The notes under the pieces were generated by a model. It did no database searches and had not been told where the DNA came from. It worked only from the letters and a program-made list of their open reading frames with translations. The translations under genes were made by a program, and so were the position numbers. Below, one piece after another: positions 6,501 to 9,500 of a stretch of DNA of 64,000 bases; the stretch's first letter is position 1, and each line of letters starts with the position of its first letter. This stretch comes from Octopus bimaculoides (taxonomy: Eukaryota): NCBI RefSeq assembly GCF_001194135.2, contig NC_068988.1, forward strand, positions 50,396,107 through 50,460,106, given 5' to 3'.

Positions 6501-9500
6501 TTTATTCAATCTAAGAATATTACTTGCATTACATGTACCTACATATCTTAACATGATATTGTGCATATGGTTGTGTTTTCAGTAATTTCTCATTTTCAAC
6601 TATTTAGTGTTTGTTGCTGATCTTTTACTAGTGGCAATCCCTTTCTAAAATGAGATTGGTCTATTAGGATTATGTTAGCTTTAGATGGAAACTTTACAAC
6701 TTCTTTGAGTTATCATTTGTCAAGTGATTATGACCTGTTTTAAAACCTTTGAAAATAAGTGATTGATTGAAATCAATCATTACTTAAGATTCTGCTAAGT
6801 GAACCTATCTTAGCTTATTAATCTTAAATTATTATTAAGATTTAATTAATCTTAAATCATAGTTAATTATTTGTTTCTAAGGTGAGCTGGATTGCAAGAA
6901 TAACCATAAAAATATCATTGCACTTCAAAATGATTCAGTCATGAGATTTACACTAAAAACTAGAAATTATTGAAGAAAATCCTGTATATAATATATTCCC
7001 TTAATACATGTATATTATTTTAATCTCTTAATATTTATCTTCTTTTTCTTTTGTTTTTTTCCAGATTTTCTGCGCTGTGATTGCTGGTGTTCTTCATTTT
7101 CTCTTTTTAGCAGCATTTTGTTGGATGTGTCTTGAAGGCATCCTGCTCTATATAATGCTTATTGAAGTCTTTGAGGCAGAATCTCGTCGAACTGCTTTTT
7201 ACCTTTTTGGTTATGGTAGGTTACTTGTCCCTTTTATCTACTTTAGGACAAAATGAACAAAGCTGTAAGAACAAAAATGGCAAGTGTGTAAAAAGCCATT
7301 GGTAATGAAAGATGTAGAGAATGTCTTAAGTTAAAATAGTAAAAGCCTTGTTTATATAATATTTATTATAAATATCACAACCTGTTTTCAGTCATGTTAC
7401 ATTAGTAATTCTTTCATTTTATTTAATGTCTCTGCAGCCTTGAGAAGAGCATGAATATTACAAAACTCAGTCTTTCTTCTGTAGCCAATAAATGTTTTCA
7501 TCTGTAAGAACTATATTTGCTTAAAAAGTATAACGCAATATACAGACTCTTAAGCTCTTTTCTATAGATTACAAACAATAAGTCCAACTTGTAATTTTGT
7601 TGTCCAACATATATATCTACCTTTTAATAACACTATCAGGTATCCCATCTTATTGGTTGTAGTCATCTACAATGGCTTCAACCATTATGGACAAACTAAG
7701 AAGCTTGAGATATTTTAAATGAAACTGGAAAATGTGTTATTTTCCAGTTTCATTACTGCACTAATTGGAGAATGAAGTGAAATGTTTTCAACCAAGAATT
7801 GAAACTTTGGTTGCCAAGATAACAACCACAGCAATAATAATGATAATTCTGAGTGAAATCATTTTGCTTCTCAGTGCTTTACCATTTGTTCATACACAAG
7901 CATTTGCAGAAACAGCAGTAGCTTTTCAGACATGTATTAGTGCTACTATATAAAAGTTCTTTGCATCATTGTAAATATGTGTATTTGACATGCCTTTGAC
8001 AAGTTAAACCACAAAAAATGTGAAGGACATTGGTCTGCAGTAGGGTGAGTAATTACACAGTAAGGTTTATCGTAGTTTGTTTAGGATAAAATATTCATGA
8101 AAATGTCAAACAGAAATAAAATACATTGTTAACAGTCAATCATCTTCAACATTTTTAAACTAGGCCAAGGCTTGAACCCAGAAACCTTTTATCGTATTAG
8201 GTCTAAACACTGAGCCTTCGTCTCAAAGAACAACAACTGATAAAATGTTAAGGTACTTAGGCATTAGACTTAAAAATTTGTTTGTATGTATTTTACATTT
8301 GTATTATTGTTGATATCAATAAATGTTTGAATATGTTTTTCCGAGATGAATTTCATAATAGTGCCTGTTTTTCAGACTATTTCTTCATCTTAGATATGTT
8401 GTTCTCAGCCACATGGTTTCAGGTTCATTCTCACTGTGTGGTACCCTGGGCAAAATGTCTTCTGCTAAAACTTTAGGCCAACCAAAGCTTTGTGAGTGGA
8501 TTTGGCAGGCAGAAAGTGAAAGAAGCCTGTCATATATGTGTGTGTATTTGTGTCAGTGTTGCTTGATAATTGTCGGAAAAGCTGTGTCTCTTGTTTCCAA
8601 ACTTCTATGGAAATATATCCAGCCATGAAGAAATATTACCTTGTTTGGCAATAAGTCAGGATTGGTGGCAGGAAAGTCATCAAGCTGTAGAAGACCCACC
8701 TCAACAAATTATGTTTGACCCATGCAAGCATTAAAAATGGTTGCTAAAATGATGATGGTGATAATATTTTGAAGCTGTTGTCTCTTGAAAATACAGGCTA
8801 GTGGTTGGATCATCATCCCAATGTACTAAAATAAATGTTCCAGGTTCAATCTTTGACCTATCTCAGACAAGTGGAGATAGAATTATACCAAATTAAAAGT
8901 CGGCAATGCTTCCAAGATGAGAAAAACACACATTATGAAACCTTTTTCTTTCTGTCATCAATCTCAAATTTTTCTGTTTGAATTTCTTAAATTTCATTTA
9001 CTTCTGTAAATTTGTTTCAGCTGTACCTTTTAATGTTTCTCGTCTACTTTATTTTATTTTATATCTCATGTGTCTTTTTGTTTTGTTGGGGGTAATCTCC
9101 AGCTGTTTAAGCATCTCAACCCTTTTCTATTTACACACACAATACACACAAGCATCTTAACCCCTTTTCCGTTTGTTCTTCAGGAATCCCTGCTCTGATT
9201 GTTGGAATCGCACTTGGTGTAGATTACAGAGGATATGGCACAGATAGGCAGTTAGTTTACTTTTTTTCTAACCTTTATAACTGCAAGATTTGGAGTTAAT
9301 GTTTTATCAGTTTGTTTGAAAATATTTTCTAAGTTAATTTTTTACTGTCACATTATGATGGAATGATTATTGCCCTTGTATTAACTGTCTCCTAGGGTTA
9401 CCACATGATAAAAAAAATCTTAAAGTAGCCAAAAAATTGATCAAAATAAGCTAAAACATTTCCTTTGTAAAGGATTATTTGTATATAACGTATTGACAAG

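What the first reader, a model, noticed from the sequence alone, without database searches (positions are those of the whole stretch)
7640..7702. Apparent duplicate of the TM4-ECL2 exon: candidate mutually exclusive exon pair in a latrophilin
Seen: 424 nt after the exon B donor, the sequence ctatCAG|GT ATC CCA TCT TA TTG GTT GTA GTC ATC TAC AAT GGC TTC AAC CAT TAT GGA CAA ACT AAG AA|GC parallels exon C. Adding one T to the TT run at about 7650 gives [21 protein letters not shown](N)-CWL versus [22 protein letters not shown](H)-CWL. The phase 1 entry on Gly, the hydrophobic TM4 half, the YG motif and the phase 2 exit three codons after YG are all shared. Inference: this is a tandem exon duplication that would swap ECL2, next to the tethered-agonist pocket. 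With both exons 3n+1 long (64 and 67 nt), including both or neither would frameshift, which would enforce mutual exclusivity. As assembled it is 63 nt with TAG at 7660-7662 and a weak GC donor, so it is either a dead exon, a poison exon or a one-base assembly error.
Basis: partly seen in the sequence, partly recalled or inferred. Interest (0 to 1): 0.75.

Follow-up and report, generated by a model that had tools for sequence, protein, structure and literature searches.

The report
Probable dead copy of receptor exon
A 63-base stretch inside an intron of a latrophilin-like receptor gene resembles the neighbouring exon for membrane helix 4, but it is frameshifted, has poor splice signals and is no more similar than chance look-alikes elsewhere, so it is at best a decayed exon duplicate and not a working alternative exon.

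Summary
These are the AG at 7638-9, 63 nt at 7640-7702, an in-frame TAG at 7660-2, GC at 7703-4, and a second frame that joins exon D in phase.

The host gene is a latrophilin-like adhesion GPCR. Its best solved relatives are ADGRL3 and ADGRL2.

The resemblance to exon C is weak:
- Identity is 7 of 23 residues, and only after a base is added.
- The score is 29, against 114 for exon C aligned to itself.
- It is the best of 7,337 AG-anchored sites in the window, but only narrowly (next best 27).
- The equally short exon D has chance look-alikes at 28-30% of its self-score, above this one's 25%.

What is unusual is the place: the flanking intron, the sense strand, and a G[T/C] at the matching exit. 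That gives a local p of about 0.001, and about 0.05 or weaker window-wide.

The splice signals are poor:
- The donor matches 3 of 9 consensus positions.
- The acceptor's pyrimidine tract is at the 81st percentile of all AGs, while all six real exons are at or above the 97th.

No related genome, second assembly or transcript could be reached.

Verdict:
- decayed tandem exon duplicate, about 0.5
- chance look-alike, about 0.38
- working mutually exclusive exon hidden by an assembly error, about 0.06

Interest is low.

The parts
432..534 (+). Exon for TM2 of the receptor (…[34 protein letters not shown]); phase 2 in, 0 out; donor AAA|GTAAGT
   Evidence: It is part of a continuous Pfam 7tm_2 match of 202 bits.
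7065..7215 (+). Exon B (TM3, IFCAVIAG…AFYLFGY-G); phase 0 in, 1 out; donor ATG|GTAGGT
   Evidence: ADGRL3 alignment.
7640..7702 (+). The candidate: a 63-nt AG-flanked look-alike of exon C. It is frameshifted, with an in-frame TAG at 7660-7662. GC follows at 7703-7704.
   Evidence: sequence and frames; statistics; splice signals.
7663..7702 (+). The AG at 7661-7662 would give a 40-nt (3n+1) exon, [13 protein letters not shown](N), in frame from B to D. TM4 would be 9 residues shorter.
   Evidence: Read from the sequence. Its Pfam 7tm_2 score is 162.0 bits, the same as random controls. It would use the same poor GC donor.
7718..7754 (+). Perfect 16-bp hairpin with a 5-nt loop, 16 nt downstream of the candidate. 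Its role is unknown.
   Evidence: I18.: -21 kcal/mol, z -4.15; unique in the window.
8402..8553 (+). SINE-like interspersed repeat in the same intron. It is not part of the candidate.
   Evidence: copies at 60683-60815, 43734-43869, 38520-38669 and 57883-57943.
9184..9250 (+). Exon C, the constitutive TM4/ECL2 exon ([23 protein letters not shown]); 67 nt; phase 1 in, 2 out; weak donor GCA|GTTAGT
9832..9898 (+). Exon D (ECL2 Cys-Trp and the first half of TM5, [22 protein letters not shown]); 67 nt; phase 2 in, 0 out
   Evidence: The frame is confirmed by the continuous 7tm_2 match.
10401..10495 (+). Exon E (rest of TM5 and ICL3, [14 protein letters not shown]…); phase 0 in, 2 out
29039..29207 (+). 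Exon F (TM6-TM7, [20 protein letters not shown]…[16 protein letters not shown]), after an 18.5-kb intron

Best explanation
The segment at 7640-7702 is most likely a decayed, non-functional relic (pseudo-exon) of a tandem duplication of the TM4/ECL2 exon of a latrophilin-like adhesion GPCR gene.

Shown:
- It lies in the intron just upstream of exon C, on the sense strand.
- It begins after an AG in the same phase and with the same Gly-Ile-Pro.
- It has the Tyr-Gly three codons before a phase-2 exit.
- It carries three defects: a one-base frameshift that brings a TAG into frame, a GC instead of GT in a context with no donor consensus, and a poor pyrimidine tract.

Inferred:
- The spliceosome normally ignores it, and the gene makes one TM4 form, from exon C.
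- If it is ever included from 7640, the TAG would truncate the reading frame and the transcript would probably be degraded.
- Whether the copy was once a working mutually exclusive partner of exon C cannot be told from this window.
For: - Position and phase match what a tandem exon duplicate predicts.
This holds against exon C (29, next 27) and against an independent ten-species TM4 profile (19.3, next 16.0).
- The simulated per-site probability is 6e-5, or 7e-6 with G[T/C] at the exit. With 108-143 AG sites in the flanking introns, that gives about 0.001-0.01 locally.
- With G[T/C] required at the exit, the next-best real site in the window scores 21.
- Global nucleotide alignment is in the top 0.1%.
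- It is not part of an interspersed repeat.
- The restored peptide adds about 25 bits to the Pfam 7tm_2 match over 19 random intronic controls: 186.7 against 156-169, with the canonical form at 202.1.
- Donor 3/9 and acceptor tract at the 81st percentile, against the 97th or higher for all six real exons.
Against: - The similarity is at chance level. It is 25% of the self-score, while the equally short exon D has chance look-alikes at 28-30%.
- The best chance look-alikes of exon C reach 173-184 bits on Pfam 7tm_2, only 2.5 bits below the candidate at the top.
- It is no closer to its own exon C (29) than to human ADGRL3 (29) or an unrelated animal (32). The signal therefore rests on family-invariant residues only.
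- There is no flank similarity and no local nucleotide similarity.
- The window-wide look-elsewhere correction brings p to about 0.05-0.5.
- Two other animals with the same intron have a single TM4 exon.
- No comparative or transcript data could be obtained.
Confidence: 0.5

Rival explanations
1. Chance look-alike. T-rich intron sequence translates into hydrophobic peptides. One of the few thousand AG sites happens to give G-I-P, a hydrophobic run and Y-G, and it happens to lie in the neighbouring intron. There is no common ancestry with exon C and no function.
For: - The unanchored scan finds 61 equal or better matches in the window.
- About 0.4-0.5 sites of this score are expected per window even on the anchored test (per-site 6e-5 times 7,337 sites).
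- Exon D's chance look-alikes score relatively higher.
- Pfam scores of the chance look-alikes come within 2.5 bits of the candidate.
- There is no own-lineage signal.
- The flanks are dissimilar.
- The donor context is below the median of arbitrary G[T/C] sites.
Against: The window's best look-alike falls among the 1.5-2% of AG sites that lie in the two flanking introns on the sense strand. It also has G[T/C] exactly at the matching exit. The joint probability is about 0.001-0.002 for this exon. The acceptor tract is above average for an AG (81st percentile).
Confidence: 0.38
2. Working mutually exclusive exon. The true sequence would have one more base near 7650, lost through an assembly error or a rare allele. 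That gives a 64-nt exon encoding [21 protein letters not shown](N), which replaces exon C and changes the outer half of TM4 and the first half of ECL2. Because both exons are 3n+1 long, including both or neither would shift the frame.
For: - The frames and phases fit after one base is added.
- GC donors are allowed by the standard criteria (PMC3228551).
- The restored receptor keeps one continuous 7tm_2 match of 186.7 bits.
- A latrophilin with mutually exclusive exons exists, though at a different site: C. elegans lat-1 exons 3A/3B (PMC3627589).
- Exon C's own donor is weak (5/9), as is often seen with regulated exons (own knowledge).
Against: - It needs an assembly error in a two-base run.
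- It also needs a GC donor with 3/9 consensus. By my own knowledge, working GC donors normally match the rest of the consensus closely.
- It also needs an acceptor weaker than all six real exons.
- No in-frame GT donor exists before the next stop.
- No second TM4 exon exists in two other animals with this intron.
- A recent review of adhesion GPCR splicing describes nothing like it (PMC13197933).
Confidence: 0.06
3. Poison exon. The 63-nt segment is spliced in between B and C as assembled. The length keeps the downstream frame, but the TAG at 7660-7662 triggers nonsense-mediated decay and lowers receptor output.
For: The length is a multiple of three and a stop lies in frame from exon B. A stable hairpin 16 nt downstream could in principle affect splice-site access; that is speculation.
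Against: The same poor splice signals apply. Nothing shows inclusion or conservation. Almost any intronic AG…G[T/C] segment would be 'poisonous' in AT-rich DNA, so the stop carries no information.
Confidence: 0.04

Closest known systems
[quoted passage not shown] 2011, PMC3228551)
   Same: It lies in the intron next to a similar exon, with the same entry and exit phase. It carries a frameshift, an in-frame stop and a missing canonical donor.
   Different: Homology itself is not secure here. The similarity is at the level of chance look-alikes, and only the position is unusual.
Mutually exclusive exon pairs whose exclusivity is enforced by reading frame (both exons not a multiple of three)
   Same: Exon C is 67 nt (3n+1). 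The candidate would be 64 nt (3n+1) after one base is added, and it would encode the same part of the protein.
   Different: As assembled it is 63 nt with a stop, so the frame criterion fails. The donor and acceptor are poor. No transcript evidence exists.
C. elegans lat-1 (latrophilin) mutually exclusive exons 3A/3B, regulated by UNC-75 (PMC3627589)
   Same: It is a latrophilin-family gene with a real pair of mutually exclusive exons, both 3n+2.
   Different: That pair is early in the gene (exon 3), not in the 7TM. It is supported by mRNA-seq. Nothing suggests the two cases are related.
Known alternative splicing of adhesion GPCRs (review PMC13197933)
   Same: Splice variants that alter segments of the 7TM domain are known in the family. 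ECL2 residues contact the tethered agonist.
   Different: That review does not describe a swap of TM4/ECL2 by mutually exclusive exons. The present candidate does not qualify as one.

Membership tests
Mutually exclusive exon pair (WebScipio criteria, PMC3228551) | The candidate lies in an intron flanking the original exon | tested here: met
   7640-7702 lies in the B-C intron (7216-9183), sense strand.
Mutually exclusive exon pair (WebScipio criteria, PMC3228551) | Similar length, differing only by whole codons | tested here: not met
   63 nt against 67 nt. The difference of 4 is not a multiple of three.
Mutually exclusive exon pair (WebScipio criteria, PMC3228551) | Reading frame conserved, with no in-frame stop | tested here: not met
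   From exon B it reads GIPSYWL-stop, with TAG at 7660-7662.
Mutually exclusive exon pair (WebScipio criteria, PMC3228551) | Compatible splice-site pattern (AG … GT/GC/GG) | tested here: inconclusive
   AG and GC are present, so the formal pattern is met. The donor context is 3/9, below the median of arbitrary G[T/C] sites. The acceptor tract is at the 81st percentile, against the 97th or higher for real exons.
Mutually exclusive exon pair (WebScipio criteria, PMC3228551) | Protein similarity of at least 15% of the self-score | tested here: inconclusive
   25% (29 of 114), but only after a base is added. Chance look-alikes reach 17-24% for exon C and 28-30% for exon D.
Mutually exclusive exon pair (WebScipio criteria, PMC3228551) | Every transcript holds exactly one exon of the pair | not testable with these tools
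   No transcript data for this organism could be reached.
Latrophilin (ADGRL) subfamily of adhesion GPCRs | Family B 7TM domain most similar to ADGRL members | tested here: met
   Pfam 7tm_2 at 202 bits over joined exons TM2-TM7. Best solved relatives are ADGRL3 (E 1e-35) and ADGRL2; ADGRE5 follows at 1e-24.
Latrophilin (ADGRL) subfamily of adhesion GPCRs | N-terminal lectin, hormone-receptor and GAIN/GPS domains | not testable with these tools
   TM1 and everything upstream lie outside the window. The first exon seen is TM2 at 432-534.
Poison exon | Inclusion introduces a premature stop | tested here: met
   TAG lies in frame at 7660-7662. This is true of most intronic segments in AT-rich DNA.
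Poison exon | Actually spliced in, with conserved splice sites | not testable with these tools
   No RNA-seq and no related genomes were available. The splice signals are poor.
Decayed tandem exon duplicate (pseudo-exon) | Common ancestry with the neighbouring exon | tested here: inconclusive
   Local p is about 0.001-0.01 and window-wide about 0.05-0.5. There is no flank similarity and no own-lineage signal.
Decayed tandem exon duplicate (pseudo-exon) | Disabling lesions | tested here: met
   Frameshift with an in-frame stop, GC in a non-consensus donor context, and a weak pyrimidine tract.

The most novel reading that the evidence does not exclude
The assembly lacks one base near 7650. The true 64-nt exon would then be a working, frame-enforced mutually exclusive partner of exon C. 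The animal could thereby make two latrophilin-like receptors that differ in the outer half of TM4 and the first half of ECL2, next to the pocket that holds the tethered agonist. This would be a way of tuning an adhesion GPCR that has not been described.
Probability: 0.05. Interest if true: 0.6.

Novelty: new member of a known kind. Interest (0 to 1): 0.2.

Why it matters
If it were a working exon pair, it would be the first case of an adhesion GPCR swapping TM4/ECL2 by mutually exclusive splicing. That would give a natural experiment on how ECL2 shapes activation by the tethered agonist. The evidence points instead to a dead relic or a coincidence. That matters only as a small note on exon duplication and loss in this gene. 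It is also a caution: short hydrophobic exons have many chance look-alikes in AT-rich introns.

Tried and rejected
**Searches for the organism or its relatives (all failed)**
- I searched for the organism's own or related proteins carrying either TM4 form. The query was B + restored candidate + D, and it returned only 16 exon fragments from other animals. None had the alternative form.
- Exact look-up of two window ORFs, to find other assemblies of the locus, found nothing on record.
- A search with seven intronic ORFs next to the candidate, including a repeat-derived one, gave no hit at all. The collections therefore hold nothing from this organism or its close relatives.
- The metagenome scan with exon B gave one useless 1.4-kb contig.
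- Supplements of two adhesion GPCR phylogeny papers are not held.

**Alternative readings that were rejected**
- Other in-frame acceptors: no AG upstream is in the right register (read).
- The AG at 7661-2 gives an in-frame 40-nt exon, but it scores like random sequence on Pfam (162 bits).
- Other donors: there is no GT in register before the next stop.
- A cassette reading with the TAG recoded to Trp splits the 7tm_2 match in two.

**Other origins**
- Origin from a transposable element or repeat: there are no copies elsewhere in the window.
- Known RNA families in 7000-10000: only two sub-threshold chance matches.

**Not verified**
- The taxon could not be verified with these tools.

Full report
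**Observation**

The window carries, on the + strand, part of a family B adhesion GPCR gene. I mapped six exons by translation and splice sites:

| Exon | Coordinates | Phase in → out |
|---|---|---|
| TM2 | 432-534 | 2 → 0 |
| B (TM3) | 7065-7215 | 0 → 1 |
| C (TM4 and start of ECL2) | 9184-9250 | 1 → 2 |
| D (ECL2 Cys-Trp and TM5a) | 9832-9898 | 2 → 0 |
| E (TM5b) | 10401-10495 | 0 → 2 |
| F (TM6-7) | 29039-29207 | 2 → 0 |

Joined, the exons give one continuous Pfam 7tm_2 match of 202.1 bits. Exons B+C+D match solved structures of ADGRL3 (E 1e-35) and ADGRL2 best, ahead of ADGRE5 at 1e-24. 'Latrophilin-like' is therefore justified for the 7TM. TM1 and the whole extracellular region lie upstream of the window, so orthology cannot be completed.

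- It starts 424 nt after exon B, behind the AG at 7638-9, and is 63 nt long.
- It reads G-I-P-S-Y-W-L-stop from exon B.
- The next frame reads [19 protein letters not shown] and joins exon D in phase.
- GC lies at 7703-4.

**Is the resemblance more than chance?**

It depends on what is asked.

- A protein-to-DNA scan that penalises frameshifts gives the candidate 22. Sixty-one places in the window do as well.
- Local nucleotide similarity to exon C is nil. The 200-nt flanks are unrelated.

- The candidate scores 29, against 114 for exon C itself. It is the best of 7,337 sites on both strands, narrowly (27, 24 and 21 follow).
- It is also first against a profile of ten TM4 segments from other animals that excludes exon C (19.3, next 16.0).
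- Simulation with a second-order Markov model gives 6e-5 per AG site. So about half a site of this quality is expected per window.
- Requiring G[T/C] at the matching exit lowers the per-site probability to 7e-6 (6 of 840,000). On that test the next-best real site scores 21.

There are 108 AG sites in the B-C intron, and 143 in both flanking introns.
- The local probability is about 0.001 with the donor dinucleotide and about 0.01 without it.
- A reader scanning all introns against all exons of the window makes roughly 7,000 such comparisons. Window-wide the figure is therefore about 0.05 to 0.5.

**Calibration**

Three controls temper the result.

First, the same procedure on exon D, which is equally short and hydrophobic, finds chance look-alikes at 35-37 of 125. 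That is 28-30% of the self-score, above the candidate's 25%.

Second, I put peptides in place of TM4 and scored the receptor on Pfam 7tm_2:

| Peptide in place of TM4 | 7tm_2 bits |
|---|---|
| Canonical exon C | 202.1 |
| Restored candidate | 186.7 |
| Eight best chance look-alikes of exon C, restored the same way | 172.9-184.2 |
| 19 random stop-free intronic peptides | 156.1-168.8 |
| TM4 deleted | 150.6 |

The candidate is again first, but by only 2.5 bits.

Third, the restored peptide is no closer to its own exon C (29) than to human ADGRL3 (29) or another animal's TM4 (32). The signal rests on the family-invariant G-x-P, a few hydrophobic positions, Y-G and a basic residue.

The degree of similarity is therefore ordinary. 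Only the place is unusual: the flanking intron, the sense strand, the matching phases and a G[T/C] at the exit.

**Can it be spliced?**

The signals are poor.
- The donor is GAA|GCTTGA, 3 of 9 consensus positions. That is below the median of 4 for arbitrary G[T/C] dinucleotides in the window. The six real exons have 5-8.
- There is no GT in the right register before the next stop.
- The pyrimidine content upstream of the AG is 0.63, the 81st percentile of all AGs. All six real exons are at or above the 97th.
- No upstream AG gives the open frame.
- The AG at 7661-2 would give an in-frame 40-nt exon ([14 protein letters not shown]). That shortens TM4 by nine residues and scores like random sequence (162.0 bits).

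**Other evidence**
- The candidate is not part of an interspersed repeat. A SINE-like element lies at 8402-8553, further along the same intron.
- Two contigs from other, unidentified animals have an intron at the same G-Y|G position. Each carries a single TM4 exon downstream (L001 and L002).
- Nothing from this organism or its relatives is in the reachable protein or contig collections. Even repeat-derived ORFs found nothing.

**Interpretation**

About 1% of exons have a tandem duplicate in a flanking intron. That figure is my own recollection of the exon-duplication literature, not a tool result. The chance probability here is about 0.001-0.002 for this exon. The odds between a true relic and coincidence are therefore roughly even to modestly in favour of the relic. 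My estimates are:
- a decayed tandem duplicate that is not spliced, 0.5
- coincidence, 0.38
- a working mutually exclusive exon hidden by a one-base error, 0.06
- a poison exon, 0.04

The working-exon reading needs three things at once. It needs an assembly error in a two-base run, a GC donor without consensus, and the weakest acceptor in the gene.

**Comparison with what is known**
- The criteria for predicting mutually exclusive exons are similar length in whole codons, compatible splice sites, a conserved frame, and similarity of at least 15% (PMC3228551). The length and frame criteria fail as assembled.
[quoted passage not shown] That describes this segment well.
- A latrophilin with real mutually exclusive exons exists: C. 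elegans lat-1 exons 3A/3B (PMC3627589). That pair is at a different place in the gene.
- A 2026 review of adhesion GPCRs reports splice variants that alter 7TM segments, and contacts between ECL2 and the tethered agonist. It reports no TM4/ECL2 swap (PMC13197933).

**Verdict**

The headline interpretation, a mutually exclusive pair, is not supported as the sequence stands. Interest is low unless reads or related genomes show an intact copy.

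Noticed in passing
window 7718-7754: A perfect 16-bp inverted repeat with a 5-nt loop lies 16 nt downstream of the candidate. As RNA it folds at -21 kcal/mol (z -4.15) and is unique in the window. Its right arm contains an acceptor-like TTATTTTCCAG. 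Its function is unknown. There is no Rfam match.
   Followed up: partly
window 8402-8553; also 60683-60815, 43734-43869, 38520-38669, 57883-57943: A SINE-like interspersed repeat of about 150 nt has at least five copies in the window, 72-80% identical. One copy is in the B-C intron.
   Followed up: partly
window 9248-9256: The constitutive TM4 exon C has the weakest donor of the real exons: GCA|GTTAGT, 5 of 9 consensus positions against 7-8 for the others.
   Followed up: no
window 31704-32618 (+): A 305-codon open frame ends in …SFSEC-stop. It is probably the last coding exon, for the cytoplasmic tail of the receptor. It has no Pfam family at E ≤ 0.01, and its acceptor was not mapped.
   Followed up: partly
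window 55607-56482 (-) and 62584-63382 (+): Several open frames of 100-170 codons downstream of the receptor gene look like fragments of mobile-element proteins. None has a Pfam hit.
   Followed up: partly
window 10496-29038: An 18.5-kb intron lies between the TM5 and TM6 exons. It holds long microsatellites ((TC)53 at 17353-17459, A49 at 19874-19922), strong GC-skew swings at 14-18 kb and an N gap at 27611-27620.
   Followed up: no
L001 3812-5060; L002 166-980; proteins P0001-P0016: The intron that splits TM3 from TM4 after G-Y|G is shared by some other animals (P0006, P0008-10, P0012). It is absent in others, where TM3 and TM4 are one exon (P0001-5, P0007, P0011). So the intron position is old but not universal.
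   Followed up: partly
window 27611-27620, 35207-35553, 52775-53249, 54993-55094, 61574-61678: Five runs of N of different lengths mark the window as a scaffolded draft assembly. This is relevant to how much trust to place in single bases.
   Followed up: no
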